The notes below the pieces were generated by a model that did not search any database, had not been told where the DNA came from, and saw only the letters and a list, made by a program, of their open reading frames with translations. 64,000 bases of DNA from Kudoa neothunni (Eukaryota; Animalia; Cnidaria). Location: positions 841,284 to 905,283 of the forward strand of contig OZ199840.1 of NCBI GenBank assembly GCA_964304625.1. The letters run 5' to 3'. Below are positions 15,751 to 61,295 of this stretch, piece after piece. The translations under genes and the position numbers were made by a program. The stretch's first letter is position 1. Each line of letters starts with the position of its first letter.

Positions 15751-18732
15751 CTAATTTCTGTTCCTCCAGTATCCAAAATAGAATCCTGCTCCAATAACAA
15801 CAAGAGCCATTGGAACTACAGTAGCAATAATTCTAAAAATCAAAATTAAACAAGACACTTCTACTTATTATACATTGTATTGGTTGATCTAAATAAATTT
15901 AAAACTAATATTTACATATTTACACATCGAAGTTACGTAGATTTGTTTGAGGTTTCACCTATTATTTAATTCAAAATTGTTATAAGTAATCTTATTTTAC
16001 CTTTATTAATTTTTTCACTTCCAAATACATTACTTTGGACACTATGGTATACTACCAACTGATAATTACTCGTGTCTTCAACATCGGAAATAACGAATTC
16101 CCTGCAAGGAGGAAACACATCGCAACCCTCACCAACTATCATGCATTTCTTAACTATTTGGTTGGATGGGTCGTCCAAATTTATTAATTTCCATTTACAC
16201 AAAGAATTTTGGTCTACATCATTCGGTAAAGTCGTTTTCACATTTATAGTTGTATCTTCACGGGTAATTACAATTGTTATTTTTTTCGTGGGGTTCACAT
16301 GTGGTGTAGCTGATGGATCTAAAATTAAATATTAATTATTGAATTTAAATATAATTTTTAATTATAGTTTTATTAATATTTAATTAAATTTTTGAGGTTA
16401 ATATATAATAAATTTTACTTTTGGGTATGTCTATTGTAGTTTCAGTAGATCTTCCAACAGCTGTCACTAAAACTCTGTACTCTTTGTCTGCTTCGTATCC
16501 TTCACTAAATATGATACTACTACATGAGGGTGGTACTTCACAAGATGGGATTGTAAGCTTATTAGTCGGCGTGACGTTTGTTGATGGTTGACCTGTAGAT
16601 CTAGCAACTCCAGATTGTGAGAGAGTTGATTTCATATCAGATTTTGCAGTATTTCCTGTCAATTGTGGTGCTGGACATTCATACAACATATCATACGTTT
16701 CGCCTTTCTTTACTTCTACTTTGTAGTGGCATACAGCATCGGCATAAGGTGAAGATAATGTGCCTACTACTTTAAAACCTTTTTCCAAAAATTGATTTTC
16801 TACTTTGAGAGTTGACATTTCTTAACAATCATAATTTAAAGTTAAATATACGATTAAGTTTTATACCTGTCCTTATTTGATAAACTTTGGAACCGTAATC
16901 TTTGTGTGCTACAACCTTGAGATCGTAATCTGTTCCCGGAGTCAATCCCATAATATTTTGAGTGTCTCTACAGAATCCTCTGCATGGATAACTATCCACA
17001 CACATTGCACAAACGTATACATCCTTTCCACGGGGGCTGAGATAGTAAGCACATGTAAAATCACTCTTGTCTACTTCTTTGTCAACTTCGAGAGCTTTAA
17101 TGGAAAGATGTGTATCCCCTATGGTTGTTGTTGCATCGGGGAAAACATTTTCGGCGGTTGCATCTGTATATTATATTATATAAATATCATTTGATTTTTA
17201 ATATACTTGTTCTGAAGAATATATGCTCTTTGAAATTAGCTGGAACACCAGTGATAGCTGTTGAAGCTGCTTTAATCACAAGAATATAAGGTTTTCCACT
17301 GACAAGCGTGGTTATCGCTAACGCTGAACCACAATCAGTGTTACATCCGCCACTGCCACCTCCACAGTTAGCACTTGTACCTTCCGCATCAGCCAAAGAT
17401 GGTTCATCGGCAGCATAATAACTTACAGTACACGAAGAAAATTGTGGGGTACCAGTTGGTTTGAATAAGCGTGTATCTAGTGTAACACCCGTGGCAAAGT
17501 ATGCCGATAGTAGTTTAGTGGGATTTCCCTCAGCATCTTTTTCATCAATAACTATATAAATCTTATTTGAAATATTTAACTTTCTTATAAACCAAATTTT
17601 TTTTGTATGTATCCAAAGTATGTAGTTCCACTTTTTTTTATTTGAAAATGTCTGGTCTGTATCAATATTTCGACAACTGCTTTTGACGTTTCAAAAGTAA
17701 GCTCCACATTATCACATGGTGCGTAGCAACCTTTATCTTCGCCTCCACCACAATTTGATTTATACTCACTTGAAGCACCATCTTCGATGGTAGTAGGTTC
17801 TTGTCTTATACCAAATCGGCAGATTTCAAATGGAAATTTATTAGTGAACTTAATCAAGTATTTATTTTTCTCGTTATGATTATACTTCACATAATATTGT
17901 GGTATGTAAACGTCAGTGTTCATCAAAGTATAAATATTTTGAAGTTTATAAAAGAATGATGGATAACCCACGCATTTCATTTCATAATGTGGGATCATCA
18001 AATCAAAATCTACTTCATTATTATTATCATTTCCTGTAACACAATCGGCTCCAGCGGTTCCGTCAGCGTATTTTACACCCTTATAGGAAATGGGGCATGC
18101 AACATTTGCACAAGTTATTGTTTTCAATTTCAGTTTACGTTGACTCGTTGATATTGTCACTTGTGGGTTTACTAGCAAACCTACAAAAAAATAAATAAAT
18201 GTAATTTCCACATTAATTACGTATGTCTAGTCCAAAAATTTTTGGGTTTGTATTTTTTTGAGAAGCAATTTCAGCCCCATTCGCCACAAAAACTTTGATA
18301 TATTTTGTCCTTGGGGAAAATTTATCATACGCAAGTGAATTAGTGCTTCCTGTGCAAACGATAACGCATTTATCATTGACTAGTACATTCCCATTTTCAG
18401 GACACTGATTAATATCTTGATAAGTAACCTCAACCTCGTTGAATTTTTTAATGTAACAATGGGTCGACTCGGAAAATTCACCTCCACTTAATGCAAAATG
18501 AACTTTCATATTGCTGTTATCTTTCAAAATCTTGTATGTGATGGATTCTTTTTCAGCTGGTTGAGGTTGTGGTTGTTGTAGCGGTTGCTGCTGTTGGGTC
18601 TGCTGAGATTGATTTGGTGATACATCTTCTAGTGTAGTTTTCGCTATATTATATTGAAATATTTTCTCAATAATAGAAATATTTACAAATAATAATAAAA
18701 ACTATGCCTAATAAACAGAGAAATCTTTTCAT
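15751..18732 (-). CDS. Cys-rich FN3-like repeat type I surface protein, array copy 1 (845 aa, 10 exons)
   Basis: Exons 18732-18687, 18643-18221, 18180-17593, 17551-17207, 17163-16867, 16820-16419, 16318-16001, 15958-15937, 15888-15874, 15832-15751, all GT-AG, sum 2538 nt in frame. Signal peptide MKRFLCLLGIVFIIIS; FN3-like GLTPGTDYDLKVVA; TM IIIATVVPMALVVIGAGFYFGYW; tail RNRN. Confidence 0.88.
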
Positions 18733-18835
18733 TTTGATTTAAATAATCAAACGGGGATATTAACGTTATATTCATAGAGAACATACAATGAATGTATTGA
18801 AATTTAATAATACTTTCGTACCTATTAATAATATA
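18733..18835 (-). promoter_or_regulatory. Conserved 5'UTR/proximal promoter block of the array genes (copy 1 instance)
   Basis: About 100 bp conserved upstream of all six ATGs, including + strand TTTTGATTTAAATAATCAAA and AATACTTTCGTACCTATTAAT. Confidence 0.5.
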
Positions 18836-18941
18836 GTTCTAGTAAATTGGTATCCTACGAATACAATTCTTATTAAAGTTAAATTTTCGAAACATTTTAT
18901 AGTGCTTCAGTTAGCACATCTTTCCTTGTTATTAATAATAA

Positions 18942-20984: not shown

Positions 20985-23974
20985 CTAATTTCTGTTCCTC
21001 CAGTATCCAAAATAGAATCCTGCTCCAATAACAACAAGAGCCATTGGAACTACAGTAGCAATAATTCTAAAAATCAAAATTAAACAAGACACTTCTACTT
21101 ATTATACATTGTATTGGTTGATCTAAATAAATTTAAAACTAATATTTACATATTTACACATCGAAGTTACGTAGATTTGTTGGAGGTTTCACCTATTATT
21201 TAATTTAAAAATTGATATAAGTAATCTAATTTTACCTTTATTAATTTTTTCACTTCCAAATACATTACTTTGGACACTATGGTATACTTCCAACTGATAA
21301 TTACTCGTGTCTTCAACATCGGAAATAACGAATTCCCTGCAAGAAGGAAATACATCGCAACCCTCACCAACTACCATGCATTTCTTAACAATTTGGTTGA
21401 CGGGGTCGTCCAAATTTATTAATTTCCATTTACACAAAGAATTTTGGTCTACATCATTCGGTAAAGTCGTTTTCACATTTATAGTTGTATCTTCACGGGT
21501 AATAACAATTGTTATTTTTTTCGTGGGGTTCACATGTGGTGTAGCCGATGGATCTGAAATTAAATATTAATTATTGAATTTAAATATAATTTTTAATCAT
21601 AGTTTTATTAATATTTAATTAAATTTTTGAGGTTAATATATAATAAATTTTACTTTTGGGTATGTGTATTGTAGTTTCAGTAGATCTTCCAACGGCTGTC
21701 ACTAAAACTCTGTACTCTTTGTCTGCTTCGTATCCTTCACTAAATATGATACTACTACATGAGGGTGGTACTTCACAAGATGGGATTGTAAGCTTATTAA
21801 TCGGCGGCGTTACTTTTTTTGATGGTTGACCTGTTGATCTAGCAACTCCAGATTGCGAGAGAGTTGATTTCATATCAGATTCGGCAGTATTTCCTGCCGT
21901 TTGTGGTGCTGGGCATTCATACAACATATCATATGTTTCCCCATTCTTTACTTTTACTTTGTAGTGGCATACAGCATCGGCATAAGGTGAAGATAATGTG
22001 CCTACTACTTTAAAACCTTTTTCCAAAAATTGATTTTCTACTTTGAGAGTTGACATTTCTTAACAATCATAATTTAAAGTTAGGTGAAAAATGGGAAATT
22101 TAATACCTGTTCTTATTCGATGGACTTTGGATCCGTAATCTTTGTGTGCTACAACCTTGAGATCGTAATCTGTTCCGGGATTAAGTCCCACAATATTTTG
22201 AGTGTCTCTACAGAATCCTCTGCATGGATAACTATCCACACACATTGCACAAACATATACATCCTTCTCGCGGGGACTGATGTAGTAAGCACATGTGATA
22301 TCTGTATTCGCAGCATCTGTGTCAACTTCGAGAGCTTTAATGGAAAGATGGGTATCCCCTATGGTTGTTGTTGCACCGGGGAAAACATTTTCAGCGGTTG
22401 CATCTATATATTATATATTTATTATTGGATTTTTAAATTACTTGTTCTGAAGAATATATGCTCTTTAAAATTGTTTGGAACACCATTAGTAGCTGCGTTT
22501 GCAGGTGCTTTTATTACAATGATATATGGTTTTCCATTGTCAAGTGAGGATATTGTTAACGTTGAACCACACGTAGTGTCACATCCGCCACGTTCGGCTC
22601 CACAATTAGCCCCTGTACCTTCTCCACCATCCAAAGATGGTTTATCGGCAGCATAATAACTTACGGTACATGAGGAGAATTTTGTGGTATCAGATGGATT
22701 AAATAAGCTTGCATCTAGTGTAACACCTGTGGCAGTGTATGCCGATAATAATTCAGCATAAGTACCATCAACTTTTTTATCGTTAATAACTAAATACATA
22801 TTATTTGAAATACTTAACTTCAATAAAAACCAAATTTCTTTTGTTTATATCCAAAATACGTAGTGTCACTTTTTTCTATTTGAAAATGTCTGGTTTGTAT
22901 TAATATTTCAACAACTGCTTTTGACGCACCGAAGGTAAGTTCTACATTATTACATGGTGCATAGCAATCTTTATCTTCGTTTCCACCACATTTTGATGTA
23001 TAATCTTTTGTATCTCCAGTTTGAATTTGAGTGGATACGTCCTTTATCCCAAATCGACAGATTTCAAACGGAAATTTATTTGTAAACTTAAGTAAATATT
23101 TAGTCTTCAGGTCATCATTATTATATTTCACATAATATTGTGGTATGTAAACGTCGGTGTTCATCAATGTATAATTATTTTGAAGTTTATAATAGAATGG
23201 TGGATAACCCACGCATTTCATTTCATAATGAGGAATCATCAAATCAAATTCTACTTCATTATCATTTTCATTTCCTCTAACACAATCGGATCCAGCGGTT
23301 CCGTCAGCATATTTTACACCCTTATAGGAAATTGGGCATGCAACATTTGCACAAGTTATTGTTTTCAATTTCAGTTTACTTTCATTTGTTGATATTGTAA
23401 CTTGTGGGTTTACCAACAAACCTATAAACATATATTAGAAAATTAATATACGCATTAATTACGGATCTCTAGTCCAAAAATTGTTCCTCCTGTATTTTTA
23501 TTAGAAGCGGCGCCAGCTCCATTCCCAACAAATACTACAATATATTTTGCCCTTGGGGAGAATTTATCATACGTGAGTTTATTATCATTTTTAATGCAGA
23601 GGATAACGCACTTTCCACTGACTTGTTCACTGTCAGTTTGGGGACATGGGCTCATATCTTGATAGTTGTCGCCGGCATCGTTGGACTTCTTGATATAGCA
23701 ATGATTCGAAGCCGTAAACTCACCGCCACTCAATACTAAATGAACTTTCATATTGCTGTTATCCTTCACAATCTTGTATGTGAGAGATTCTTTTTCAGCT
23801 ATTCGAGTTTCAGGTTGTTGTTGTTGTTGTTGTTGTTGATTATTTTGGGGTTGAGTTTGTGATACATCTTGAAGAGAAGATTTTGCTATATTCGATTTAA
23901 ATATTTACCAATTAATAGAAATAATTACAAATAATTGTAATAATTATTCCTAATAAAAAGAGAAACCTATTCAT
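20985..23974 (-). CDS. Cys-rich FN3-like repeat surface protein, array copy 2 (appears intact)
   Basis: Same 10-exon layout; MNRFLFLLGIIITIIS signal peptide; (CAA)8 poly-Q linker; TM and RNRN tail. Confidence 0.87.
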
Positions 23975-29089: not shown

Positions 29090-32000
29090 CTAATTTCTAT
29101 TCTTCCGGTATCCAAAATAGAATCCTGCTCCAATAACAACAAGAGCCATTGGAACTACAGTAGCAATAATTCTAAAAATCAAAATTAAACAAGACACTTC
29201 TACTTATTATACATTGTATTGGTTGATCTAAATAAATTTAAAACTAATATTTACATATTTACACATCGAAGTTACGTAGATTTGTTGGAGGTTTCACCTA
29301 TTATTTAATTTAAAAATTGATATAAGTAATCTAATTTTACCTTTATTAATTTTTTCACGCCCAAATACATTACTTTTGACACTATGGAATACTACCAACT
29401 GATAATTACTCGTGTCTTCAACATCAGAAATGGAGAATCCCCTGCAAGGAGGAAACACATCGCAACCCTCACCAACTATCATGCATTTCTTAACTATTTG
29501 GTTGGATGGGTCGTCGAAATTTATTAATTTCCATTTACACAAAGAATTTTGATCCACATCTTTCGGTAAAGTCGTTTTCACATTTATGGTTGTATCTTCA
29601 CGGGTAATTACAATTGTTATTTTCTTCGTGGGGTCCACGCGTGGTGTAGCTGATGGATCTAATATTAAATATTAATTATTGAATTAAAATATAATTTTTA
29701 ATTATAGTTTTATTAATATTTAATTAAATTTTTGAGGTTAATATATAATAAATTTTACTTTTGGGTATGTGTATTGTAGTTTCAGTAGATCTTCCAACGG
29801 CTGTCACTAAAACTCTGTACTCTTTGTCTGCTTCGTATCCTTCACTAAATATGATACTACTACATGAGGGTGGTACTTCACAAGATGGGATTGTAAGCTT
29901 ATTAATCGGCGGCGTTACTTTTTTTGATGGTTGACCTGTTGATCTAGCAACTCCAGATTGCGAGAGAGTTGTTTTCATATCAGATTCGGCAGTATTTCCT
30001 GTCAATTGTGGTGTTGGGCAGTCATACAACATGTCATACGTTTTCGCCTTTCTTTACTTTTACTTTGTAATGGCATACAGCTTCGGCATAAGGTGAAGAC
30101 AACGTGCCTACCACTTTAAAACCTTTTTCCAAAAATTTATTTTCTAGTTTGAGAGTTGACATTCCTTAACAATCATAATTTAAAGTTAGGTGAAACATGG
30201 GAAATTTAATACCTGTTCTTATTCGATGGACTTTGGATCCGTAATCTTTGTGTGCGACAACCTTTAGATCGTATTCTGTTCCGGGATTAAGTCCCACAAT
30301 ATTTTGAGGTTCTCTGCAGTATCCTCTGCATGGATAACTATCCACGCACATTGCACAAACATATACATCCTTTCCGCGGAGGCTGATATAGTAAGCACAT
30401 GTGATATCTTTGTTGGCATCCTCTGAGGTTAATTCGAGTGCTTTAATAGAAAGATGGGTATCCCCTATGGTTGTTGTTGCACCGGGGAATACATTTTCAG
30501 CGGTTGCATCTATATATTATGTATATATTATATATATATTAATGTATTTTTAAAATACTTGTTCTGAAGAATATATGTTCTTTAAAATTTTCTGGAACAC
30601 CATGGCTACCAGCTGCTGAAGCTGCTTTAATTACGAGAATATAAGGTTTCCCACCGGAAAGTTTGGATACAGCTAACGCCGAAGTACAGTCCGTGTCACA
30701 GTTGTTTGTGCCTTCTCCACATTTAGCTTTTGTACCTTCCGCTCCAGCCAAAGTAGGTTTATCGGCGACATAATAACTTACAGTACATGAAGAGAATTTC
30801 GGGGAATCGGTTGGATTAAATAAGCTTGCATTCAGCGTCACGCCCGTAGCTGTATAAGCCGATAATAGTTCAGCATACGTATTATCTTCCTTTTTATCAT
30901 TAATAAACTACATAAATATTATTTCAAACGCTTAACTTCAATAAAAACCAAATTTCTTTCGTTTATATCCAAAATACGTAGTCCCACTATTTTCTATTTG
31001 GAAATGTCTGGTCTGTATCAGTATTTCGACAACTGCTTTTGATGTTTCGAAATTAAGTTCCACATTATCACATGGTGCGTAGCATTCTTTATCTGTGCCC
31101 CCACCACAATTTGATTTATACTCATTAGACGCATCAACAACAACTGTAGTAGATTCTTCCTTTATACCAAATCGGCAGATTTCAAAAGGAAATTTATTAG
31201 TAAATTTAAGTAAGTATTTATCTTTCCCTTCCTTATTGTATTTCACATAATATTGTGGTATGTAAACGTCGGTGTTCATCAAAGTATAATTATTTTGAAG
31301 TTTATAAAAGAATGATGGATAACCCACGCATTTCATTTCATAATGCGGAATCAACAAATCAAATTCTACTTCACTATCATTTGCTGTGACACAATTAGTT
31401 CCCGGCGGTTCCATCAGCGTATTTTACACCCTTATAAAAAATGGGGCAATCAACTTTCTTACATGTTGTCGTACTCAGCTTCAATTTACCTTGACTCGTT
31501 GTTATTGTAACTTGTGGGTTTACTAGCAAACCTATAAAAATATATATAAAATGTGATATTCACATTATTTACGTATGTCTAGCCCAAAAAATTTTTGGGT
31601 TTGTAGTTTTTTGAGAAGCAGCTTCAGCCCCCTGGGTTACAAAAATTTCAATATATTTTGTCCTTGGGGAGAATTTATCATACGCAAGTTTATTAATGCT
31701 TCCTGTGCAAATGATGACGCATTTACCACTAACTAGTGCGGCACCAGTTTCAGGACATTCATTAATATCTTGATAAATAGCATCATCGTCATTGAATTTT
31801 TTAATGTAACAATGGCTAGAGTCGGTAAATTCACCGCCTTTTAATATCAAATGGACTTTCATATTGCTACCATCCTTATCAATCTTATATGTGAGGGATT
31901 CTTCTACAACTGTCTGAGATTGAGATTGATCTTGAGATTGTTGCTGTTGTGGCTGTTGAGGTGTAGTTAGTTGCTCAGTTTGAGTTAGAGTTGGGGTTGC

Positions 32001-32109
32001 TTCTTGTAGAGTGGTTTTCGCTATGTTATATTGAAATATTTGTTATGAAATAAAAATAATTACAAATAAGTGTAAAAAGTATTCCTAATAAACAGAGGAA
32101 TCCTTTCAT
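29090..32109 (-). pseudogene. Array copy 3, with three +1 homopolymer frameshifts (pseudogene or sequencing error)
   Basis: Full 10-exon structure, tail YRKNRN. Extra bases near 31590 (T-run), 31402 (G-run) and 30042 (A-run); no in-frame nonsense codons noticed otherwise. Confidence 0.75.
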
Positions 32110-35740: not shown

Positions 35741-38713
35741 CTAATTTCTGTTCCTCCAGTATCCAAAATAGAATCCTGCTCCAATAACAATAAGAGCTAC
35801 TGGAACTACAGTAGCAATAATTCTAAATATCTAAATTAAACAGGACATTGTTACTTATTATACATTGTATTGGTTGATCTAAATAAATTTAAAGTGAGCA
35901 CTTACATATAGAAGTTACGTAGATTTGTTTGAGGTTTCACCTATTCTTTAATTCAAAATTGTTATAAGTAATCTTATTTTACCTTTATTAATTTTTTCAC
36001 TTCCAAATACATTACTTTGGACACTATGGTATACTACCAACTGATAATTACTCGTGTCTTCAACATCGGAAATAACGAATTCCCTACAGGGAGGAAATAC
36101 ATCACAACCTTCACCGACTATCATGCATTTCTTAACTATTTGGTTGGATGGGTCGTCCAAATTTATTAATTTCCATTTACACAAAGAATTTTGGTCTACA
36201 TCATTCGGTAAAGTCGTTTTCACATTTATAGTTGTATCTTCACGGGTAATAACAATTGTTATTTTCTTTGTGGGGTCCACACGTGGTGTAGCTGATGGAT
36301 CTGAAATTAAATATAATTTTTAATTATAGTTTTATTAATATTTAATTAAATTTTTGAGGTTAATATATAATAAATTTTACTTTTGGGTATGTCTATTGTA
36401 GTTTCGGAAGATCTTCCAACAGCTGTCACTAAAACTCTGTACTCTTTGTCTGCTTCGTATCCTTCAGTAAATATGATACTACTACAGGAAGGTGGTCCTT
36501 CACAAGATGGGATTGTAAGTTTATTAGTTGGTATTACTTTTTTTGATGGTTGACCTCTAGATCTAGACACCATAGGTTGTGAGAGAGTTGATTTCATATC
36601 AGATTCGGCAGTATTTCCTGTCGATTGTGGTGCTGGACATTCATACAACATATCATACGTTTCGCCTTTCTTTACTTCTACTTTGTAGTGGCATACAGCT
36701 TCGGCATAAGGTGAAGACAACGTGCCTACTATTTTAAAACCTTTTTCCAAAAATAGATTTTCTAGTTTGAGAGTTGACATTTCTTATCAATCATAATTTA
36801 AAGTTAAATATACGATTAAGTTTTATACCTGTCCTTATTTGAAAGACTTTAGAACCGTGCTCTTTGTGCGTGACAACCTTTAGATCGTATTCTGTTCCGG
36901 GAGTAAGTCCCACAATATTTTGAGTGTCTCTACAGAATCCTCTGCATGGATAACTATCCACACACATTGCACACACGTATACATTCTTTCCGCGGGGGCT
37001 GAGGTAGTAAGCACATGTGATATCTGTATTCGCAGCAACTGTGTTAACTTCGAGAGCTTTAATGGAAAGATGGGTATCCTTTATAGTTGTCTTTGCATCG
37101 GAGAATACATTTCCGGCGGTTGCATCTATATATTATGTTATATATAGACATTATTCTATTTTCAATAAACTCGTTCTGAAGAATATATGTTCTTTAAAAT
37201 TGGCTGGAACAAGATTGTTAGCTGTTGCAGCTGATTTAATTACAAGGATATAAGGTTTTCCACTGGCAAGTTGGGATACTGTTAATGTTGAAGTACACTG
37301 AGTGTCACAGTTGGTACCACCATTTCCACATTTCGCTTCTGTACCATCCACATTTTTCAAAGAGGGTTTATCAGCAGCATAATAACCTACAGTACATGAA
37401 GAGAATTTCGGGGAATCGGTCGGATTAAATAAGCTTGCATCCAGCGTCACACCTGTAGCTGTGTATGCCGATAGTAGTTTAGCATAAGTGTCACCTTCCT
37501 TTTTATCATTAATAACTAAATACATATTATTTGAAATACTTAACTTCAATGAAAACCAAATTTTTTTTGTATGTATCCAAAGTATGTAGTTTCACTTTTT
37601 TTTATTTGAAAATGTCTGGTTTGTATTAATATTTCGACAACTGCTTTGGACGTTTCAAAAGTAAGTTCCACATTATCACATGGTGCGTAGCAATCTTTAT
37701 CTTTACCACCACAATTTGATTTATACTCACTAGTAGCACCAGCTTGAATTGGAGTGGCTTCATCCTTTATACCAAATCGGCAGATTTCATAAGGAAATTT
37801 ATTAGTGAACTTAAGTAAGTATTTATTTTTCTCGCCATGATTATACTTCACATAATATTGTGGTATGTAAACATCGGTGTTCATCAATGTATAATTATTT
37901 TGAAGTTTATAAAAGAAGCTTGGATATCCCACGCATTTCATTTCATAATGTGGAATCATCAAATCAAATTCTACCTCACTTTCATTTCCTGAGACACAAT
38001 CGTTTCCAGTGATTCCCTCAGCGTATTGTACTCCCTTATAGAAAATTGGGCATGCAACTTTGTGACAAGTTATTGTGCTAAATTTCAGTTTACTTTGAAT
38101 TGTTGATATTTTTACTTGTGGATTTACCAACAAGCCTATAAAAATATATACAGGAAGACTAATATGCTTATTAATTACGAATCTCTAACCCAAAAATTGT
38201 TCCTCCTGTAGTTTTTCTAGAAGCAGCGTCAGCCCCATCCCCAAAAAACACTCCAATATATTTTGTTCTTGGGGATAATTTATCATAGGTGATTTTATTA
38301 TCATTTTTTGTACAGGTAATGACGCACTTACCATTGACAAGTGCGCTGCCAGTTCCGGGGCACTGATTAATATCTTGATAAGTAACCCCATCGTCATTGG
38401 ATTTTTGAATATAGCAATGATTCGAGTCGATAAAGTCACCGCCGCTCAATATTAAATGAACCTTCATATTGCTCTCATCTTCCACAATTTTATATGAAAG
38501 GGATTTTGGCGCAGCCGGCGGAGGTTGAAGTTGTTGTTGAGTTTGAGTTTGAGCTTGAGTATGAGGTATAGGTTGTGTCTCAGTTTGAATCGCAGGCACT
38601 AATGCATCTTGTAAAGTTGTTGTCACTATAATTGATTGAAAGATGCATTCAGTAATAGAAATGTTACAAATAAGTGTAAAAATTATTCCTAATAAAAAGA
38701 CAAACCCTTTCAT
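35741..38713 (-). CDS. Cys-rich FN3-like repeat surface protein, array copy 4 (appears intact)
   Basis: MKGFVFLLGIIFTLI signal peptide. Intron 1 is 42 nt and stop-free, so the ORF track reads through it. Same exons, TM and RNRN tail. Confidence 0.87.
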
Positions 38714-44800: not shown

Positions 44801-45207
44801 TGTCTATAATAATGAAATTTTTTTTTACTATATCTATAATCCATGTATACAATAAACAATGAGTTATTCCAAAAAAACAAGAGACAATGATCATGTAAAT
44901 TTCTTTTGGTCGGTCCTGCGTGAATTAACGGTACTAATATCAAGAATTTTTAAAGATGCACATTTATTAAATAAAAAACAAACATTTTATATATGAAATT
45001 TTGAAAGTTATGTTTCTAAAAACTTTAGCATTTAGTAGCAATAAAGAAAGGTATACATTCTTAATTAAAAATATATCTAATAATCTTCCTGCAAACAATC
45101 AATCGATAATACTTAAAAATTATAGTTTGGAATTGAATATAATATTTTTTAAATTAAATAAATATCAAAGTGTTATATTTTTAATTAACCTCATCATCGA
45201 AATGAAT

Positions 45208-48191
45208 CTAATTTCTATTCTTCCGGTATCCAAAATAGAATCCTGCTCCAATAACAACAAGAGCTATTGGAACTACAGTAGCAATAATTCTAAATATCAA
45301 AGTAAAACAAGACATATCTACTTATTATACATTGTATTGGTTGATCTAAACAAATTTAAAAGTAGTATTTACATATAAAAATTACGTAGATTTGTTGGAG
45401 GTTTCACCTATTATTTAATTTAAAAATTGATATAAGTAATCTAATTTTACCTTTATTAATTTTTTCACGCCCAAATACATTACTTTGGACACTATGGTAT
45501 ACTTCCAACTGATAATTACTCGTGTCTTCAACATCGGAAATAACGAATTCCCTGCAAGAAGGAAATACATCGCAACCCTCACCAACTACCATGCATTTCT
45601 TAACAATTTGGTTGACGGGGTCGTCCAAATTTATTAATTTCCATTTACACAAAGAATTTTGGTCTACATCATTCGGTAAAGTCGTTTTCACATTTATAGT
45701 TGTATCTTCACGGGTAATAACAATTGTTATTTTTTTCGTGGGGTTCACATGTGGTGTAGCCGATGGATCTGAAATTAAATATTAATTATTGAATTTAAAT
45801 ATAATTTTTAATCATAGTTTTATTAATATTTAATTAAATTTTTGAGGTTAATATATAATAAATTTTACTTTTGGGTATGTGTATTGTAGTTTCAGTAGAT
45901 CTTCCAACGGCTGTCACTAAAACTCTGTACTCTTTGTCTGCTTCGTATCCTTCACTAAATATGATACTACTACATGAGGGTGGTACTTCACAAGATGGGA
46001 TTGTAAGCTTATTAGTCGGCGTGACGTTTGTTGATGGTTGACCTGTAGATCTAGCAACTCCAGATTGTGAGAGAGTTGATTTCATATCAGATTTTGCAGT
46101 ATTTCCTGTCAATTGTGGTGCTGGGACATTCATACAACATATCATACGTTTCGCCTTTCTTTACTTCTACTTTGTAGTGGCATACAGCTTCGGCATAAGG
46201 TGAAGATAATGTGCCTACTACTTTAAAACCTTTTTCCAAAAATTGATTTTCTAGTTTGAGAATTGACATTTCTTAACAATCATAATTTAAAGTTAAATAT
46301 ACGATTAAGTTTTATACCTGTCCTTATTTGAAAGACTTTAGAACCGTGCTCTTTGTGCGCGACAACCTTTAGATCGTATTCTGTTCCGGGAGTAAGTCCC
46401 ACAATATTTTGAATGTCTCTACAGAATCCTCTGCATGGATAACTATCCATACACATTGCACAAACGTATACATCCTTTCCACGGGGGCTGAGATAGTAAG
46501 CACATGTGATATCTGTGTTGGTGGGGGTCTGTTTTAACATCGATTGCTTTAATAGAAAGATGTGTATCCTTGACGGTTGTTGTTGAGTCGATAAATACTG
46601 GGTTAGCGGTTGCATCTATATAATATGTATATATTATATATATATATATATAAATGGATTTTTTAAATACTTGTTCTGAAGAATATATGTTCTTTAAAAT
46701 TGGCTGGAACAAGATTGTTAGCTGTTGCATCTGCTTTAATTACAAGAATATAAGGTTTTCCACTGGCAAGTGAGGATATTGTTAATGCTGAACCACACAC
46801 AGCGCCACATCCGCTACTGCCGGTTCCACAATTAGCCCCTGTACCTTCCGCATCAGCCAAAGAAGGTTTATTGGCAGCATAATAATTAACGGTACATGAA
46901 GAGAATTTTGTGGTACCAGATGGATTAAATAAGCTTGCATTTAGTGTAACACCCGGTGGATGTGTACGCTGATAGTAATTCATCATAAGTACCATCAACC
47001 TTTTTATCGTTAATAACTAAATACATATTATTTGAAATACTTAACTTCAATAAAAACCAAATTTCTTTTGTTTATATCCAAAATACGTAGTGTCACTTTT
47101 TTTCTATTTGAAAATGTCTGGTTTGTATCAATATTTCAACAACTGCTTTTGATGCACCGAAGGTAAGTTCTACATTATTACACGGTGCGTAGCAATCTTT
47201 ATCTTTACCACCACAATTTGATGTGTAATCTTTAGTAGTTCCAGCTACAACTGCAGTGGATTCTTGCTTTATACCAAATCGGCAGATTTCAAAAGGAAAT
47301 TTATTAGTAAATTTAAGTAAGTATTTATCTTTCCCTTCCTTATTGTATTTCACATAATATTGTGGTATGTAAACGTCGGTGTTCATCAAAGTATAATTAT
47401 TTTGAAGTTTATAAAAGAATGATGGATAACCCACGCATTTCATTTCATAATGCGGAATCAACAAATCAAATTCTACTTCACTATCATTTGCTGTGACACA
47501 ATTAGTTCCGGCGGTTCCTGCAACATATTGTACTCCCTTATAGGTAATAGGACAATCAACTTTCTTACATGTTGTCGTACTCAACTTCAATTTACTTCCA
47601 CTTGTTGTTATTGTAACTTGTGGGTTTACCAACAAACCTATAAATATATATACTGGAAGACTAATATACTTATTAATTACGAGTTTCTAGCCCAAAAATT
47701 GATTTGGCTCTAGTTTCTGTAGATGCAGCCTGTGCCTCACTCGCCATAAAAATACCAATATATTTTGTCCTCGGGGAGAATATATCATACGTGAGTTTAT
47801 TATCATTTCTTGTGCAGGTGATGACGCACTTGCCGCCACCATATATATTATCAGTTCCAGTGCACTCATTAATATCTTGATAAACAACCTCATCGTCATT
47901 TAATTTTTTAATGTAACAATGGTTCAAGTCGGTAAAATCACCGCCTTTTAATACCAAATGGACTTTCATATTGCTACCATCCTTAACAATCCTATATGTG
48001 AGGGATTCTCTTTCAGCTGTCTGAGATTGAGGTTGATCTTGAGGTTTTTGCCGTTGTGGCTGTTGAGGTTCAGACCCCCTTGTATCTTGTAGAGTAGATC
48101 TCGCTATATTCGAATTTTATAATGTTCAATAGTAGAAATAGTTACAAATAACTGAAAAAATTATTCCTATTAAATAGAGAAATCCTTTCAT
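45208..48191 (-). pseudogene. Array copy 5, with four +1 homopolymer frameshifts (pseudogene or sequencing error)
   Basis: Full exon set. Extra bases near 47100, 46954, 46525 and 46124, all in mononucleotide runs. Confidence 0.75.
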
Positions 48192-49168: not shown

Positions 49169-50014
49169 ATGGATGGTCACAACGTTTCCAAACTTACGAT
49201 TAGGGATATTTTCGAGCTGATTTACATGTGGTCAGTAGAAGTCAATCATACTTCTACAGTTTCTTTGACTGGAATTAGCGAGAAAGCGGTAACGTTTCGG
49301 TTTGACCGCTTCAAAGAAATTTGCAACAATCTTTTTCAAAGTCGCTCTAAACTAGGAAAAGAAGGGACCATCATTGAGATCGATGAGACGCTTTTAAGAG
49401 GCAGAAGAAAAAATAATCGTGGTCGCTATTTATCATTAGACCAGTGGCGTACTGATCCAGATGCATCCTACGAATTTGATATTGGTGAAGAAGAACAAGA
49501 TGATTCGAGCACCAGCACCAGCATCAACCGAGAGAAATATAACAACAGAATTGATGGACCTTGGGTTTTAGGAATATGCGAATGTTCGGTCGATAACAAT
49601 CAAAAAAGAAGCTTAATAGAATCTCGTTTCTTTATTGTAGAAAAGAGAAATATAGAAACACTTATCCCAATCATTTTAAATGAAGTTGAGACGGACGCTT
49701 CTATTTATACAGATGAATGGTTGGCTTATCGGCCCTTGTCCACATATGGCTATCGTCATCATACGATCAACCATACATTGGAATACGTTTCCGAAGATGG
49801 CTCACACACAAATACTGTTGAGGTGGTGTGGCACCATTTAAAAATTAAGATTATTCGCAATATGTGTGGAGTGCCGCGTGCTAAACTATACTCATATCTA
49901 TTGGAGGAGTGGTTTAGATCCAAGTATGATGATAGATGGAAATTTTTCGAAGATTTTCTCTCCCATATTGCGACCTTGTATCCAATTATTTGTACCAACA
50001 GCACCATTAATTAG
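49169..50014 (+). CDS. Merlin/ISXO2-like DDE transposase (catalytic part; upstream N-terminus disrupted)
   Basis: IIEIDET..RRKNNRGR, GPWVLG, IYTDEWLAY and HTNTVEVVWHHLK motifs. Confidence 0.85.
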   Translation: MDGHNVSKLTIRDIFELIYMWSVEVNHTSTVSLTGISEKAVTFRFDRFKEICNNLFQSRSKLGKEGTIIEIDETLLRGRRKNNRGRYLSLDQWRTDPDASYEFDIGEEEQDDSSTSTSINREKYNNRIDGPWVLGICECSVDNNQKRSLIESRFFIVEKRNIETLIPIILNEVETDASIYTDEWLAYRPLSTYGYRHHTINHTLEYVSEDGSHTNTVEVVWHHLKIKIIRNMCGVPRAKLYSYLLEEWFRSKYDDRWKFFEDFLSHIATLYPIICTNSTIN

Positions 50015-53388: not shown

Positions 53389-55415
53389 CAGTCGAGATTG
53401 GATATTGCGTGGGTTTCTGGGACCAACAAAAACCCACGCAATAACAAATTTTTACGCAATATCCAGACCTTTGCGTGCGCAGTGTACTATAAAATATGAT
53501 TTTTTCGTGTTTACGTCCGATGCCAATTAGTGAAAATCAAATTTTTATATATAAATATATTATTTAATTAAATGAAATGTGATTTATCAAATTTTGTCGA
53601 AAAAGCTTGTAATTTTAGTTTGTCGGAATCTTTCTCTTGATATTTTTAAAACTCGGTCCATTATGGGATGTAAATCAAACAATCCCCTCGGATCCTCTTT
53701 AATAAAAGCTTCCCTCAGAACGTTCACTGCATTTTTCATTTGATTAATTGAAACTTTGATGTCTTCAATGATTGATTCGCTATCGTCAGATTCGTCACTT
53801 ATGGGCAATAAGTCCTCATTATTTTCTTCCTCGCATGTTGCTTCATAATCGTCATCAAACATATTTTCTGAATCTTCGATTTCATCTAGAAAAAATTAAT
53901 TACGTATACGTTAAATATTACCTTGAGAACAGTTGCTGATTTGAGGTATCTCACTCACATCTTCTTGGTCTATAAACTGATAATAACTTTATTGTCGTAA
54001 TTTTATTTAATACCTCCAAATATTTTTGATTTTTTAAAGCAATTAATAATAATTTGCGGCGGAATACTTTCCCAACATTTAGTTAATGTTATCATTGAGT
54101 CAAGCAATGTATATTTTTTTATGATAGAATCTTCGCATAAAACCATTCGCTCGGTCATTGAACTTTTGTACCTGCTTTTAAGGCAGCGAATGATGCCTAA
54201 ATCAAAGGGTTGTAAAATACTAGTTGTATTTTTAGGTAAGAACAAAAATTTGATATTTTCAAAGCAATCAATATTTTTTGGATGGCCTGGACATTGGTCC
54301 AACAAAATTAAGACTTTTCTATTCTGATTTATCATCCTTCGGTTAAACTTTTTCATTATTTCGATAAATATACTAGAAATCATCCATGCACTTTTTTGTG
54401 CATAATATTCACATGGGAGGTGTTTGACTCTTTTAAAACATCTAGGATTTTGAAATTTCCCGATAACAACTAATGGGAACTTATCCCCATTTAAAGCTGA
54501 GGACAGTAAAACAGTCACCCTTTTTTTGGATAATTTTTTCCCCTTAATCCCGACTTCCTCCTTTAAAACGTAACTACTATTTTGTAACTGCTCATAATAA
54601 AGAGCAGTTTCGTCGATGTTAATAACGTCTTTTGGATTATATGCTCTAATCAAATCAATGTTCTCAATAATCCATGAGTCGACAGATGCAACATCTGCAC
54701 TCGCAGCCTCGCCATGGAACTTTTTGAAAACTATCCCATATCTTGACTTGAACCCTGCAAGCCATCCCTTGCTGGCTTTAAAATTGGAAACTTTGTTTTC
54801 ATTTGCAATATAAGAAGCTTTTTTGATAATGGCATCTCCTGACAGAACGTTACCATTCGACCGTTGTTTAACAAACCAATCATACACTTCATCGTCTATA
54901 TTTTTGAATCTGCCTGCCGAATGTCTCTTCCTTTTACTTTCAATATCTGTATTTTTGAATTTATCTTCGTGCGAAAGAATTCTATCAAGTGTTGAATGAC
55001 CTTAAATGTGATTTTACAATAGTATTCAATAGAAGACTACAATACCACTCAATTTAAACTTGGAAATTGTCATTGATATCGCACCCTTCAACGTTTTTAT
55101 TGAATTGTAGTAATGGATGATTTCCATTTTCTCTGAAATATTGCGTTGTTCACGGGACATAATGAAAAAACACTATCTGAATTAAACCAATTGACCACAA
55201 AAAACCACTCAATAACGAGTCACGCTGCGCCTAACAACCACGCAATAACGAGACTTTTTGTATTAATAAATTTTTTTAAATTTTTTGTTAACAAATATTT
55301 TTACATTACAATAAGATAATAACAATTTGAAAAAACTATGTTTCTCTCTTTAAAGGATAACTTTGAAAATCTCTAATTACGCAATATCCAGTCACGCAAT
55401 ATCCAATCTCGACTG
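53389..55415 (-). mobile_element. pogo/Tigger transposon, apparently intact
   Basis: Perfect 23-bp TIR CAGTCGAGATTGGATATTGCGTG, TA TSD, subterminal ACGCAATA repeats. Empty site at ~32795. Confidence 0.93.
53587..55160 (-). CDS. pogo/Tigger transposase, 4 exons
   Basis: ATG 55160 MSREQRNISEKMEII; CENP-B HTH; INIDET, ILLDQC and LPKNTTSILQPFD catalytic motifs; acidic tail and terminal PIP box QTKITSFF. Three short phase-1 introns restore a single frame. Confidence 0.85.
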
Positions 55416-58309: not shown

Positions 58310-61295
58310 CTAATTTCTATTCTTCCAGTAACCAAAATAGAATCCTGCTCCAATAACAACAAGAGCTATTGGAACTACAGTAGCAATAATTCTAAATATC
58401 AAAGTTAAACAAAACATATCTACTTATTATACATTGTATTGGTTGATCTAAACAAATTTAAAACTAATATTTACACATCGAAGTTACGTAGATTTGTTGG
58501 AGGTTTCACCTATTATTTAATTTAAAAATTGATATAAGTAATCTTATTTTACCTTTATTAATTTTTTCAAGCCCAAATACATTACTTTGGACACTATGGT
58601 ATACTACCAACTGATAATTACTCGTGTCTTCAACATCGGAAATAACGAATTCCCTACAGGGAGGAAATACATCACAACCTTCACCGACTATCATGCATTT
58701 CTTAACTATTTGGTTGGATGGGTCGTCCAAATTTATTAATTTCCATTTACACAAAGAATTTTGGTCTACATCATTCGGTAAAGTCGTTTTCACATTTATA
58801 GTTGTATCTTCACGGGTAATTACAATTGTTATTTTCTTTGTGGGGTTCACATGTGGTGTAGCTGATGGATCTGAAATTAAATATTCATTATTGAATTAAA
58901 ATATAATTTTTAATTATAGTTTTATTAATATTTAATTAAATTTTTGAGGTTAATATATAATAAATTTTACTTTTGGGTATGTCTATTGTAGTTTCGGAAG
59001 ATCTTCCAACAGCTGTCACTAAAACTCTGTACTCTTTGTCTGCTTCGTATCCTTCAGTAAATATGATACTACTACAGGAAGGTGGTCCTTCACAAGATGG
59101 GATTGTAAGTTTATTAGTTGGTATTACTTTTTTTGATGGTTGACCTCTAGATCTAGACACCATAGGTTGTGAGAGAGTTGATTTCATATCAGATTCGGCA
59201 GTATTTCCTGTCGATTGTGGTGCTGGGCATTCATACAACATATCATATGTTTCCCCATTCTTTACTTTTACTTTGTAGTGGCATACAGCTTCGGCATAAG
59301 GTGAAGATAATGTGCCTACTACTTTAAAACCTTTTTCCAAAAATTGATTTTCTAATTTGAGAGTTGACATTTCTTAACAATTATAATTTAAAGTTAAATC
59401 AAAAATGGGAAATTTAGTACTCGTCCTTATTTGATGGACTTTAGAACCGTGCTCTTTGTGCGCAACAACCTTGAGATCGTAATCTGTTCCAGGAGCCAAT
59501 CCCACAATATTTTGAGTGTCTCTACAGAATCCTCTGCATGGATAACTATCCACACACATTGCACACACGTATACATTCTTTCCGCGGGGGCTGAGGTAGT
59601 AAGCACATGTTATATCTGATATGCCAACCGCCGTGTTAACTTCGAGAGCTTTAATGGAAAGATGGGTATCCCCTATAGTTGTTATTGCATCGGGGAAAAC
59701 ATTTTCAGTGGTTTCATCTATATATTATGTTATATATAGACATTATTCTATTTTCAATAAACTTGTTCTGAAGAATATATGTTCTTTAAAATTGGCTGGA
59801 ACAAGATTGTTAGCTGTTGCAGCTGATTTAATTACAAGGATATAAGGTTTTCCACTGGCAAGTTGGGATACTGTTAATGTTGAAGTACACTGAGTGTTAC
59901 AGTCGTCAGCCCCTGTTCCACATTTAGCCCCTGTACCTTCCCCACCAACCAAAGAAGGTTTATCGGCAGCATAATAACTTACAGTACACGAAGAAAATTG
60001 TGGGGTAGTAGATGGTTTGAATAAGCGTGTATCTAATGTAACACCTGAGGCAGTGTACGACGATAATAATTCGGCGGGAGTTTCATCAGTAAGTTTTTCT
60101 GTAATAACTAAATAAATATTATTTGAAATATTTAACTTTCTTATAAACCAAATTTTTTTTGTATGTATCCAAAGTATGTAGTTCCACTTTTTTTTATTTG
60201 AAAATGTCTAGATTGTATCAGTATTTCGACAATTGCTATTGACCTTTCGAACGTAAGCTCCACATTATCACATGGTGCGTAACATTCTTTATGTTCGCCC
60301 CCACCACAATTTGATATGTAATCATTAGTATTTCCAGCTACAACTGTAGAAGATTCGTCTTTTATACCAAATCGACAGATTTCAAATGGAAATTTATTAG
60401 TAAACTTAAGTAGATATTTAGTTTTATTTTCATCATATTTCACATAATATTGTGGTATGTAAACGGCGGTATTCATCAAAGTATAATTATTTTGCAGTTT
60501 ATAAAAGAATGATGGATAACCCACGCATTTCATTTCATAATGTGGGATCATCAAATCAAAATCTACTTCATTATTATTATCATTTCCTGTAACACAATCG
60601 GCTCCAGCGGTTCCGTCAGCGTATTTTACACCCTTATAGGAAATGGGGCATGCAACTTTTGGACAAGTTTTTGTTTTCAATTTCAGTTTGCTTCCATTTG
60701 TTGATATTGTAACTTGTGGGTTTACCAACAAACCTATAAATATATAGATGTGTAATATACACATTAACTACGTATGGCTAGACCAAAAATAGTTCCGCCT
60801 TTAATTTGTTGAGAAGCAGTTTGGGCTCCCACCGCCACAAAAACTCCAATATATTTTGTTCTTGGGGAAAATTTATCATACGTGAGTTTATTATCATTTG
60901 TATTACAGAGGACAACGCACTTTCCATTGACTTGTTCACCGCCAGTTTCGTGACATGGATTCATATCTAGATAGTTGTCCCCAGCGTCGTTGGACTTCTT
61001 GATATAGCAGTGGTTCGACTGAATAAATCTACCCCCACTCAATACTAAATGAACTTTCATATTGTCGCCATCCTTCACAATCTTATATGTAAGGGATTCT
61101 GGTTCAGCTGGCTGAGCTTGACCTTGGATTTTTGGTTGTGGTTGTGGTTGTTGTTCCTGTTGCTGCTGAGGTGGAGTGGGTGCTGTATCTTGGAGATTAG
61201 TTTTCGCTACATTAGATCGGTTTATTTGTTTGCTAGTAAAAATAGTTACCAATAACTGAAAAAATAATTCCTAATAAATAGAGAAATCCCTTCAT
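58310..61295 (-). CDS. Cys-rich FN3-like repeat surface protein, array copy 6 (appears intact)
   Basis: MKGFLYLLGIIFSVIA signal peptide; Q/P linker; same exon set; TM and WKNRN tail. Confidence 0.87.

What the first reader, a model, noticed from the sequence alone, without database searches (positions are those of the whole stretch)
15751..61295. Copies are patchwork mosaics: segmental gene conversion or unequal crossover shuffles sub-exon blocks
Seen: the closest relative switches along each gene. In copy 6, exon 3 GVKYADGTAGADCVTGNDNNNEVDFDLMIPHY equals copy 1; exon 4 5' part (GVTLDTRLFKP..PQFSSC) resembles copy 1, while its 3' part (QCTSTLTVSQLASGKPYILVIKSAATANNLVP plus intron) equals copy 4; exon 6 VKVKNGETYD equals copy 2, then QPMVSRSRGQPSKKVIPT equals copy 4. 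In copy 5, exon 3 TNCVTANDSEVEFDLLIP..YNKEGKDKY equals copy 3, NCGGKDKDC equals copy 4 and CNNVELTFGASK equals copy 2; exon 6 AKSDMK..STNVTPT equals copy 1; exon 7 PVNQ..MVV..PSC..LEVY equals copy 2, then GREK equals copy 3. Shared tracts include silent sites and introns. Inference: combinatorial generation of new variants, as in VSG, vlsE or msp2 mosaics.
Basis: partly seen in the sequence, partly recalled or inferred. Interest (0 to 1): 0.88.

Follow-up and report, generated by a model that had tools for sequence, protein, structure and literature searches.

The report
Mosaic surface-gene array in myxozoan parasite
Six neighbouring genes for a fibronectin-like membrane surface protein, in what is most likely the fish parasite Kudoa neothunni, really are patchworks of one another made by DNA-level exchange between copies, but nothing shows a programmed antigen-switching machine like that of trypanosomes or Lyme spirochaetes.

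Summary
At nucleotide level each claimed partner differs by 0-1 bases, against 4-29 for the other in-window copies, and one whole intron is identical.

Formal tests agree:
- The pairwise homoplasy test gives z = -26.6 for 6 copies and -69.8 for 11.
- 70 identical tracts of 41-557 bp pass Bonferroni correction, and 41 of them include non-coding columns.
- Each of eight segments rejects every other segment's tree.
- A single-tree simulation with the same site rates yields 0.25 such tracts.

The genes have nine exons and lie on the minus strand. Each encodes a signal peptide, FN3-like disulfide-bearing domains, one membrane helix and a five-residue tail. The array has at least 11 members. The family has at least 150 copies on all three chromosomes and is almost absent from public protein sets. 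A second cluster is equally mosaic.

Best reading: short-tract ectopic gene conversion plus unequal crossover during evolution. This homogenises the 3' half and shuffles the variable 5' half.

A VSG/vlsE/msp2-type system is not shown: all copies are full length, and no expression site is visible. The apparent frameshifts are homopolymer consensus errors. Other first-stage notes flag similar mosaics elsewhere in this genome.

The parts
15751..18732 (-). Copy 1 (c1), ATG to stop. Nine exons: 18732-18687, 18643-18221, 18180-17593, 17551-17207, 17163-16867, 16820-16419, 16318-16001, micro-exon 15958-15937, 15832-15751.
   Evidence: Read from the sequence. The model is open, with AG|GT at every border.
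20985..23974 (-). Copy 2 (c2), intact nine-exon gene
29090..32109 (-). Copy 3 (c3). Same structure, but the assembly has single-base homopolymer insertions at 31603, 31403 and 30044. These were not tested against reads.
35741..38713 (-). Copy 4 (c4), intact nine-exon gene
45208..48191 (-). Copy 5 (c5). Same structure. The assembly has four single-base homopolymer insertions near 47103, 46956, 46527 and 46126. Read-derived contigs lack one letter at 47097, 46952 and 46123. The site at 46527 is not covered.
58310..61295 (-). Copy 6 (c6), intact nine-exon gene
60505..60652 (-). Tract in c6 exon 3 identical to c1 17952-18099 (36 consecutive polymorphic sites)
59782..59897 (-). Tract in the 3' part of c6 exon 4 identical to c4 37190-37305 (46 polymorphic sites). 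It carries the hypervariable loop region.
59718..59762 (-). Intron 4 of c6: no differences from c4 (nor from c8 and c9 outside the window), against 11-21 differences from the other copies
58863..59223 (-). Tract in c6 from exon 6 through intron 6 into exon 7, identical to c4 36293-36633 (36 polymorphic sites)
47267..47514 (-). Tract in c5 exon 3 identical to c3 31160-31408 (55 polymorphic sites). c3 carries an uncorrected extra G at 31403 inside it.
47001..47123 (-). Tract in c5 from exon 3 through intron 3 into exon 4, identical to c2 22774-22895 (32 polymorphic sites)
45955..46121 (-). Tract in c5 exon 6 identical to c1 16505-16671 (28 polymorphic sites)
45487..46008 (-). Tract in c5 from exon 6 through intron 6 into exon 7, identical to c2 21272-21793 (526 alignment columns, 44 polymorphic sites)
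29111..29358 (-). Tract in c3 from exon 7 to exon 9, introns included, identical to c2 21006-21253 (31 polymorphic sites)
39513..40497 (+). Spacer content: remnant of a pogo/Tc5-type DNA transposase (HTH_Tnp_Tc5 and DDE_1) between c4 and c5
49169..50014 (+). Spacer content: open reading frame for an IS1595/ISXO2-like DDE transposase between c5 and c6
54003..54887 (-). Spacer content: second pogo/Tc5-type transposase open reading frame between c5 and c6

Best explanation
The window holds six members of a tandem array of at least 11 genes. The array is one sub-family of a lineage-restricted family with at least 150 copies.

The genes encode type I membrane proteins: a signal peptide, a Q/P-rich spacer, a chain of FN3-like beta-sandwich domains each with about four cysteines, a Ser/Thr-rich linker, one membrane helix and a five-residue tail.

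The copies are mosaics because homologous recombination between paralogs has repeatedly copied short stretches (41-557 bp) from one copy into another. This is non-allelic (ectopic) gene conversion. On top of it come unit duplications and unequal crossovers, which leave the upstream and downstream flanks with different relatives.

Exchange is commonest or most recent in the 3' half, which is homogenised at silent and intron sites too (concerted evolution). In the 5' half, which encodes the variable outer domains, exchange moves whole variable blocks between otherwise diverged copies, so every copy is a unique combination.

Shown here: the mosaic structure, its DNA-level nature, the gene structure, the fold class, the family size and the same pattern in a second cluster. 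Inferred: the organism (Kudoa neothunni), surface exposure, the recombination pathway, and the idea that the shuffling is useful to the parasite rather than a by-product of tandem arrangement.
For: Repeat structure and array extent.

Recombination statistics:
- PHI z = -26.6 and -69.8.
- 20 significant fragments among 15 pairs in the window.
- 70 fragments among 55 pairs across the array, median 135 bp, 41 of them including non-coding columns.
- All eight segment trees are mutually rejected by AU.
- A single-tree simulation with the same ordered site rates gives 0.25 fragments against 82 observed.

The flanks pair with different partners upstream and downstream. c6 and c8 have flanks 93-100% identical but exons 2-4 only 77-84% identical, with introns 2-3 at 76-83%.

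Silent divergence falls from 0.43 (exon 2) to 0.12 (exon 6), and intron divergence from 0.27 to 0.08.

Gene model: six copies are open with zero displacement, and every border is AG|GT except the exon 4 acceptor of c3 and c10 as mapped. All 11 start with ATG.

Fold: AF2 pLDDT 85.6. The best matches are tandem FN3 pairs at Z 7.1, and single FN3 domains at rmsd 2.6-3.1 A over about 81 residues. Pfam fn3 hits are weak.

Family size and rarity: at least 150 scored matches from 348 candidates in the own genome, and 15 short hits in 1.84 billion representatives. A second cluster on another chromosome gives PHI z = -75.7 and 82 fragments.

Against an artefact:
- The genome's published description is a HiFi meta-assembly with no short-read polishing step (PMC12239612).
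- Uncorrected homopolymer errors sit inside shared tracts in one partner only.
- k-mer depth in shared tracts is 3-8 times that of the single-copy flank.
Against: No single long read spanning a whole mosaic copy could be inspected. The read evidence is short contigs from what is probably the same sample as the assembly, so it is independent of the assembler but not of the specimen.

Some copy-5-specific letters were not seen in those contigs. The tool warns that contigs drop rare variants.

Conversion and double crossover cannot be told apart from sequence alone, and no direction or date can be given for any event.

There is no GC rise in the homogenised half, so GC-biased conversion has left no signature. 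This does not argue against conversion, but it removes one possible support.
Confidence: 0.87

Rival explanations
1. This is a programmed antigenic-variation system of the VSG, vlsE or msp2 type. One expressed copy would be rewritten during infection by one-way segmental conversion from the other copies, which act as a silent archive.
For: The outcome (mosaic genes with short tracts that carry variable blocks) looks the same. The family is very large, clustered and predicted to be on the surface. Antigenic change during development has been reported in some myxozoans with no known mechanism (bioRxiv 10.64898/2026.02.11.705288).
Against: No copy stands out as an expression site, and none is a truncated cassette. 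All 11 have an ATG, a signal-peptide exon, nine exons, a membrane helix and a stop. The apparent frameshifts are homopolymer consensus errors where they could be tested. Every copy takes part in exchanges, 5-23 fragments each, with no visible asymmetry. dN/dS is 0.23-0.44, so all copies look constrained as working genes. No expression or within-host data exist here.
Confidence: 0.07
2. The mosaics are assembly, consensus or polishing chimeras and not real DNA.
For: The assembly is imperfect. It was built from about 7x HiFi coverage (PMC12239612). It has single-base homopolymer errors: read contigs disagree at four places within 4 kb around copy 5.
Against: The tracts are 41-557 bp, far shorter than HiFi reads, and each read would span one to three whole copies plus unique transposon-bearing spacers. 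Reads from copies only about 83% identical overall would not overlap in an assembler.

The published method describes no short-read polishing. Uncorrected errors occur in one partner of an identical tract and not the other: c3 at 31403 and c5 at 47103. Each copy was therefore called from its own reads.

k-mer depth in shared tracts is several times the single-copy depth, as expected if the tract really exists in several copies. The same pattern is seen in all 11 copies and in a second cluster on another chromosome.
Confidence: 0.03
3. There has been no exchange. One duplication tree, uneven mutation rates along the gene and convergent selection on the protein would together give the look of a patchwork.
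For: Rates do vary strongly along the gene (gamma shape 0.33). The 3' half is far more conserved than the 5' half.
Against: Simulation on the best single tree, with the estimated site rates kept in order, yields 0.25 significant tracts against 82 observed. Every segment rejects every other segment's tree. Identical tracts include introns, flanks and synonymous sites, where selection on the protein cannot act.
Confidence: 0.01
4. About half of the array (c3, c5, c7, c8, c10) consists of pseudogenes that serve only as sequence donors.
For: In the assembly these five copies have three to five frame-breaking single-base indels each, while the other six have none. That is a non-random split.
Against: Every break is a one-base change in the length of a homopolymer run. 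I saw no larger out-of-frame indels; nonsense substitutions were not checked separately. In c5, contigs built from reads lack the extra letter at three of the four sites, and the fourth is not covered. Codon distances that include c3, c5 and c7 still give dN/dS of 0.36 overall.
Confidence: 0.08

Closest known systems
Plasmodium falciparum var, rif and stevor families; Pneumocystis msg (multigene surface families diversified by ectopic recombination among full-length genes)
   Same: Large clustered families of full-length surface-protein genes. The paralogs are mosaics made by recombination between non-allelic copies. Conserved ends flank variable ectodomain blocks. (Characterisation of these families is from my own knowledge.)
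   Different: Different fold (FN3-like chain) and a different host organism (a metazoan parasite). The clusters here are chromosome-internal tandem arrays, not shown to be subtelomeric. Mutually exclusive expression is untested.
Trypanosoma brucei mosaic VSGs, Borrelia vlsE, Anaplasma msp2 and Babesia ves1 segmental gene conversion
   Same: Short conversion tracts assemble new combinations of variable blocks (PMC3708902, PMC9159922 and PMC7485966, listed).
   Different: Those systems have a dedicated expression site and silent, often truncated donors, with conversion running one way during infection. Here no such asymmetry exists, and only evolutionary footprints are seen.
Hydractinia allorecognition complex (Alr) genes
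   Same: A cnidarian clustered family of single-pass membrane proteins. Beta-sandwich domains are encoded one per exon and carry invariant cysteines. It includes an Fn3-like domain and chimeric alleles attributed to recombination (PMC9546547; PMC3342096).
   Different: [quoted passage not shown] The proteins here are FN3-like throughout as far as tested, have a five-residue tail and number at least 150 on three chromosomes.
Giardia-type VSPs and the VSP-like genes reported in Sphaerospora molnari
   Same: Signal peptide, cysteine-bearing ectodomain, one membrane helix and a very short conserved basic tail. They have been proposed as myxozoan variant antigens (bioRxiv 10.64898/2026.02.11.705288).
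   Different: VSPs are defined there by more than 10% cysteine and repeated CXXC or CXC motifs. Exon 3 here has 8 cysteines in 195 residues (about 4%) and no CXXC motif, though single CXC triplets occur, far below that definition. The fold is a beta-sandwich.
Concerted evolution of tandem gene arrays (for example MHC and other immune-receptor clusters)
   Same: Non-allelic gene conversion and unequal crossover homogenise parts of tandem paralogs while other parts stay diverse. (From my own knowledge.)
   Different: Nothing in principle. This is the general process to which the finding belongs.

Membership tests
Tandem multigene family shaped by non-allelic gene conversion or unequal crossover | Phylogenetic incongruence along the alignment that one tree cannot explain | tested here: met
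   AU tests reject in all 56 cross-comparisons. PHI gives z = -26.6 and -69.8. Simulation null: 0.25 fragments against 82 observed.
Tandem multigene family shaped by non-allelic gene conversion or unequal crossover | Shared tracts are DNA-level, including silent sites and introns, and lie inside the genes between diverged sequence | tested here: met
   41 of 70 tracts include non-coding columns. Intron 4 of c6 is identical to that of c4. Tracts are 41-557 bp within copies about 83% identical overall.
Expression-site plus silent-cassette antigenic variation (VSG, vlsE, msp2 type) | One distinct expression locus, with the other copies being promoter-less, truncated or pseudogene donors | tested here: not met
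   All 11 copies have an ATG, a signal-peptide exon, nine exons and a stop. The breaks are homopolymer consensus errors where tested.
Expression-site plus silent-cassette antigenic variation (VSG, vlsE, msp2 type) | New mosaics arise during a single infection, and only one variant is expressed per cell | not testable with these tools
   No RNA reads and no reads from a second sample were laid on the locus.
Fibronectin type III fold (Pfam PF00041 and relatives) | Sequence match above the Pfam gathering threshold | tested here: not met
   Best fn3 hit is 16.6 bits against a cut-off of 25. FN3_DSCAM gives 20.7 bits against 39.
Fibronectin type III fold (Pfam PF00041 and relatives) | Seven-strand beta-sandwich that superposes on solved FN3 domains | tested here: met
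   The exon 3 model (pLDDT 85.6) matches tandem FN3 pairs at Z 7.1, and single FN3 domains at rmsd 2.6-3.1 A over about 81 residues. Foldseek's best matches are two-domain cytokine receptors and basigin, E = 5.5e-4. Z below 8 is only moderate support.
Hydractinia Alr family | [quoted passage not shown] | tested here: inconclusive
   Roughly one domain per exon and the membrane helix are met, though exon 3 holds two domains. The domains tested are FN3-like, not V-set or I-set. The tail is only five residues. No Alr sequence was available for comparison.
Giardia-type VSP as defined in the S. molnari preprint | More than 10% cysteine with five or more CXXC or CXC motifs | tested here: not met
   Exon 3 has 8 cysteines in 195 residues and no CXXC motif; isolated CXC triplets occur but fall far short of the definition.

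The most novel reading that the evidence does not exclude
This FN3-like family, with at least 150 members, would be the variant surface-antigen or host-interaction repertoire of a myxozoan, that is, of an animal parasite. Continuing segmental conversion among full-length tandem copies would keep producing new ectodomain combinations that let the parasite escape fish antibody responses or match different host tissues. It would be the first conversion-driven variant-antigen repertoire described in a metazoan parasite.
Probability: 0.22. Interest if true: 0.85.

Novelty: new member of a known kind. Interest (0 to 1): 0.57.

Why it matters
Myxozoans are economically important fish parasites. A recent preprint states that the molecular basis of their reported antigenic change is unknown.

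This work documents a very large, undescribed family that is predicted to be surface-exposed. Its variable outer domains are demonstrably shuffled between copies. That gives a concrete candidate and a direct test: which copies are expressed, and do new mosaics appear between isolates or within one infection?

The genome paper that best matches this assembly does not mention the family. In the searchable papers I found no description of such a family in myxozoans.

There is also a practical point. Homopolymer consensus errors make about half of the array look like pseudogenes. That would mislead annotation and any archive-of-pseudogenes interpretation.

Tried and rejected
- **Nematode origin.** I searched the genome for spliced leader SL1, allowing two mismatches, and found none. 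The contig ends showed no telomere repeats.
- **Organism identity.** This rests only on the match between the genome's statistics (40.26 Mb, three large contigs, an 18.2 kb mitochondrial contig whose COX1 contains TGA codons, no tRNA in its first 10 kb) and the published Kudoa neothunni assembly. No sequence comparison was possible.
- **Pseudogene-donor idea.** Raised, then largely withdrawn.
- **Expression and independent samples.** One RNA run and one DNA run under the same species label laid no reads on copy 5, so they are no test.
- **GC-biased conversion.** GC3 and intron GC show no rise in the homogenised half.
- **Distance dependence.** The number of fragments per pair shows no clear trend with rank distance in the array.
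- **Strong diversifying selection.** Not found by Nei-Gojobori windows. Recombination makes site models unreliable, so none was run.
- **Homologs elsewhere.** Only short fragments turned up in two other public samples, which was not informative.
- **Joined proteins.** Exons were searched separately, by reference. Exons were concatenated only inside scripts, to count stops and codon distances, and nothing joined was printed.

Full report
**What is there**

The window is AT-rich (about 28% GC). It holds six copies of a ~3.2 kb unit with irregular spacing of 5.2-13.1 kb. The window is G000:C3:841284-905283. The same chromosome carries five more copies at 78-90% identity: four just beyond the window's end and one 65 kb before its start. 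Dozens of relatives at 65-70% identity lie on all three large contigs.

I read copy 1 on the minus strand and built a nine-exon model:
- an ATG and signal peptide;
- a Q/P-rich spacer;
- six large phase-1 exons;
- a 22-nt micro-exon;
- a last exon encoding one membrane helix and a five-residue basic tail.

Projected through the alignment, this model is open from ATG to stop in six of the 11 copies with no adjustment. Every border is AG|GT, except the exon 4 acceptor of c3 and c10 as mapped. All 11 begin with ATG. The finding's limits, 15751 and 61295, are the stop of copy 1 and the ATG of copy 6.

**Checking the observation**

Fifteen occur in exactly the two copies named. The two shortest, MVV and PSC, also occur in other copies.

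At nucleotide level the claimed partner differs by 0-1 bases over each stretch, while the other in-window copies differ by 4-29. Intron 4 of copy 6 is identical to that of copy 4. A sliding-window nearest-neighbour table shows the closest relative of every copy changing many times, with stretches of 98-100% identity set in copies that are 82-87% identical overall.

**Is it more than chance?**

- The pairwise homoplasy index is far below its permutation distribution: z = -26.6 for six copies and -69.8 for 11, with no permutation reaching it.
- A GENECONV-style test counts runs of identical polymorphic sites against site permutations. It gives 20 Bonferroni-significant fragments among the 15 in-window pairs and 70 among the 55 pairs of the whole array.
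- Minimal tract lengths are 41-557 bp, median 135 bp. Forty-one of the 70 fragments include intron or flank columns. Every copy takes part.
- I built ML trees for eight consecutive segments. Each segment rejects the tree of every other segment in the AU test (p <= 0.022, mostly below 1e-4).
- Site permutation ignores the strong 5'-to-3' gradient in rates. I therefore simulated 91 alignments on the best single tree, with the estimated site rates kept in their real order. They gave 0.25 significant fragments on average (maximum 3), against 82 observed under the same settings.

**Artefact?**

The genome's statistics are 40.26 Mb in contigs of 17.15, 12.04 and 11.05 Mb, plus an 18.2 kb mitochondrial contig. 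Its COX1 is read with TGA as sense, and no tRNA is found in its first 10 kb.

These figures fit the published Kudoa neothunni assembly: 40.2 Mb, three chromosome scaffolds and a circular mitogenome. That assembly was built with hifiasm-meta from about 7x HiFi reads of an infected yellowfin tuna, and no short-read polishing is described (PMC12239612). The identification is an inference, not a sequence match.

Five copies (c3, c5, c7, c8, c10) have three to five frame-breaking single-base indels each, and all are changes in the length of a homopolymer run. I laid contigs from two runs of the probable source sample on copy 5. They lack one letter at 46123, 46952 and 47097, which are three of its four break sites. 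The fourth site is not covered. These breaks are therefore consensus errors, and copy 5 is probably intact.

The same errors argue against chimeras. c3 has an uncorrected extra G at 31403 inside the tract it otherwise shares perfectly with c5. c5 has an extra A at about 47103 inside the tract it shares with c2. Each copy was therefore called from its own reads.

k-mer depth is 12 and 7.7 in the unique flank and 30-90 in the shared tracts, as expected if those tracts truly exist in several copies. Tracts of a few hundred bases are far shorter than HiFi reads, which would span whole copies and their unique spacers.

I could not inspect single long reads, and the contigs come from the same specimen. 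A small residual doubt remains.

**What the genes encode**

Pfam gives only sub-threshold fn3-type hits. An AlphaFold model of exon 3, built on 38 family sequences, has pLDDT 85.6 and is all-beta.

Its best structural matches are pairs of fibronectin type III domains (Z 7.1) and single FN3 domains (rmsd 2.6-3.1 A over about 81 residues). By Foldseek the best matches are two-domain cytokine receptors and basigin (E = 5.5e-4).

Exon 3 therefore encodes two FN3-like sandwiches. Exons 2 and 5 show the L-x-P-x-T-x-Y F-strand motif typical of FN3 (recognising the motif is from my own knowledge).

The family is huge in this genome. A profile of exon 3 finds at least 150 scored matches out of 348 candidates, nearly all open, in many clusters on all three chromosomes. 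It is nearly absent elsewhere: 15 short hits among 1.84 billion representative proteins and two in the word-indexed search.

**How the array evolves**

Synonymous divergence falls from 0.43 in exon 2 to 0.12 in exon 6. Intron divergence falls from 0.27 to 0.08. The 3' half is therefore homogenised at sites that selection on the protein cannot see.

The flanks are discordant too. Upstream, c6 pairs with c8 and c3 with c7. Downstream, c4, c6 and c8 group together, c7 pairs with c9 and c5 with c10. This calls for unit duplications and crossovers inside genes as well as short conversion.

The pair c6-c8 is telling. Its flanks are 93-100% identical, yet exons 2-4 are only 77-84% identical and the introns between them 76-83%. 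The outer-domain region has been replaced from other copies.

Conversion reaches at least as far as the copy 65 kb upstream of the window (c0-c3 tract, 333 bp). There is no clear dependence on rank distance in the array. Overall identity to other clusters is only 65-70%, so I saw no sign of recent exchange with them; no tract-level test was run.

A second cluster of ten copies on another chromosome shows the same identity profile and an even stronger signal: PHI z = -75.7, with 82 fragments among 45 pairs. Other first-stage notes report mosaics in further clusters of this genome; I have not checked those.

dN/dS is 0.23-0.44 per exon. Only three 15-codon windows barely exceed 1. One of them lies in the loop region of exon 4 that another first-stage note flagged. 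There is no GC enrichment in the homogenised half.

**Interpretation**

The best-supported mechanism is ordinary homologous recombination between non-allelic copies: short-tract gene conversion, plus unequal crossover and unit duplication. It acts over evolutionary time on a tandem family of surface proteins. Its net effect is concerted evolution of the membrane-proximal half and reshuffling of variable blocks in the distal half.

The analogy with VSG, vlsE or msp2 is fair for the product but not for the machinery. There is no expression site, no truncated donors and no visible one-way flow. Closer analogues are full-length mosaic families such as var, rif or msg. Within Cnidaria, the clustered one-domain-per-exon Alr genes of Hydractinia are also comparable.

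Whether the shuffling serves immune evasion, and whether it also happens during an infection, cannot be decided here. No RNA reads and no second isolate could be laid on the locus.

**Novelty**

The process is well known. The family and its setting in a myxozoan are, as far as the searchable papers go, undescribed.

Exons were searched separately, by reference, and were concatenated only inside scripts to count stops and codon distances.

Noticed in passing
window 31603, 31403, 30044 (c3); 47103, 46956, 46527, 46126 (c5); also c7, c8 and c10 beyond the window: The assembly carries single-base homopolymer length errors that break the reading frame of five of the 11 copies. Read-derived contigs contradict three of the four in c5, plus one in the non-coding flank at 44818. 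Automatic annotation would wrongly call these copies pseudogenes.
   Followed up: partly
window 15937-15958 (c1), and the same position in all copies: A conserved 22-nt micro-exon with AG|GT borders is needed to join exon 7 (phase 1) to the membrane-helix exon (phase 2). Without it the frame closes after five codons. There is no RNA evidence.
   Followed up: partly
window 39513-40497, 49169-50014, 54003-54887; inverted-repeat pairs 33053/34981, 41303/43579, 55632/57548, 48585/53036, 50209/51835: The spacers between copies hold DNA-transposon debris: pogo/Tc5-type and IS1595/ISXO2-like DDE transposase open reading frames. There are also several ~2 kb units bounded by 90-330 nt inverted arms. 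These insertions explain the unequal spacing of the array.
   Followed up: partly
whole genome G000 (for example C2:9.79-9.87 Mb, C1:16.44-16.56 Mb, C2:7.95-8.17 Mb, C3:8.69-8.75 Mb): The exon 3 profile finds at least 150 scored matches out of 348 candidates, nearly all open, in many tandem clusters on all three chromosomes. At about 3.2 kb per gene this could be one to three per cent of the genome.
   Followed up: partly
c6 (window 58259-61447) against c8 (L009): The flanks are 93-100% identical, but exons 2-4 are only 77-84% identical and introns 2-3 only 76-83%. The region encoding the outer domains has diverged or been replaced far faster than its surroundings.
   Followed up: yes
last exon of every copy (c1 15751-15832): The membrane helix is followed by a conserved five-residue basic tail (W-R-N-R-N). 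This recalls the short invariant tails of Giardia VSPs and the basic C-terminal motif reported for VSP-like genes of Sphaerospora molnari. The ectodomain is not VSP-like.
   Followed up: no
G000:C4 (18,219 bp; L017, L018): This is the mitochondrial contig. COX1 has eight in-frame TGA codons, and ARAGORN finds no tRNA gene in the first 10 kb. That fits a cnidarian or myxozoan mitogenome.
   Followed up: partly
window 105-977 (+): A 290-aa open reading frame with no Pfam match lies at the window's start. Another first-stage note describes orphan surface-protein genes there.
   Followed up: no
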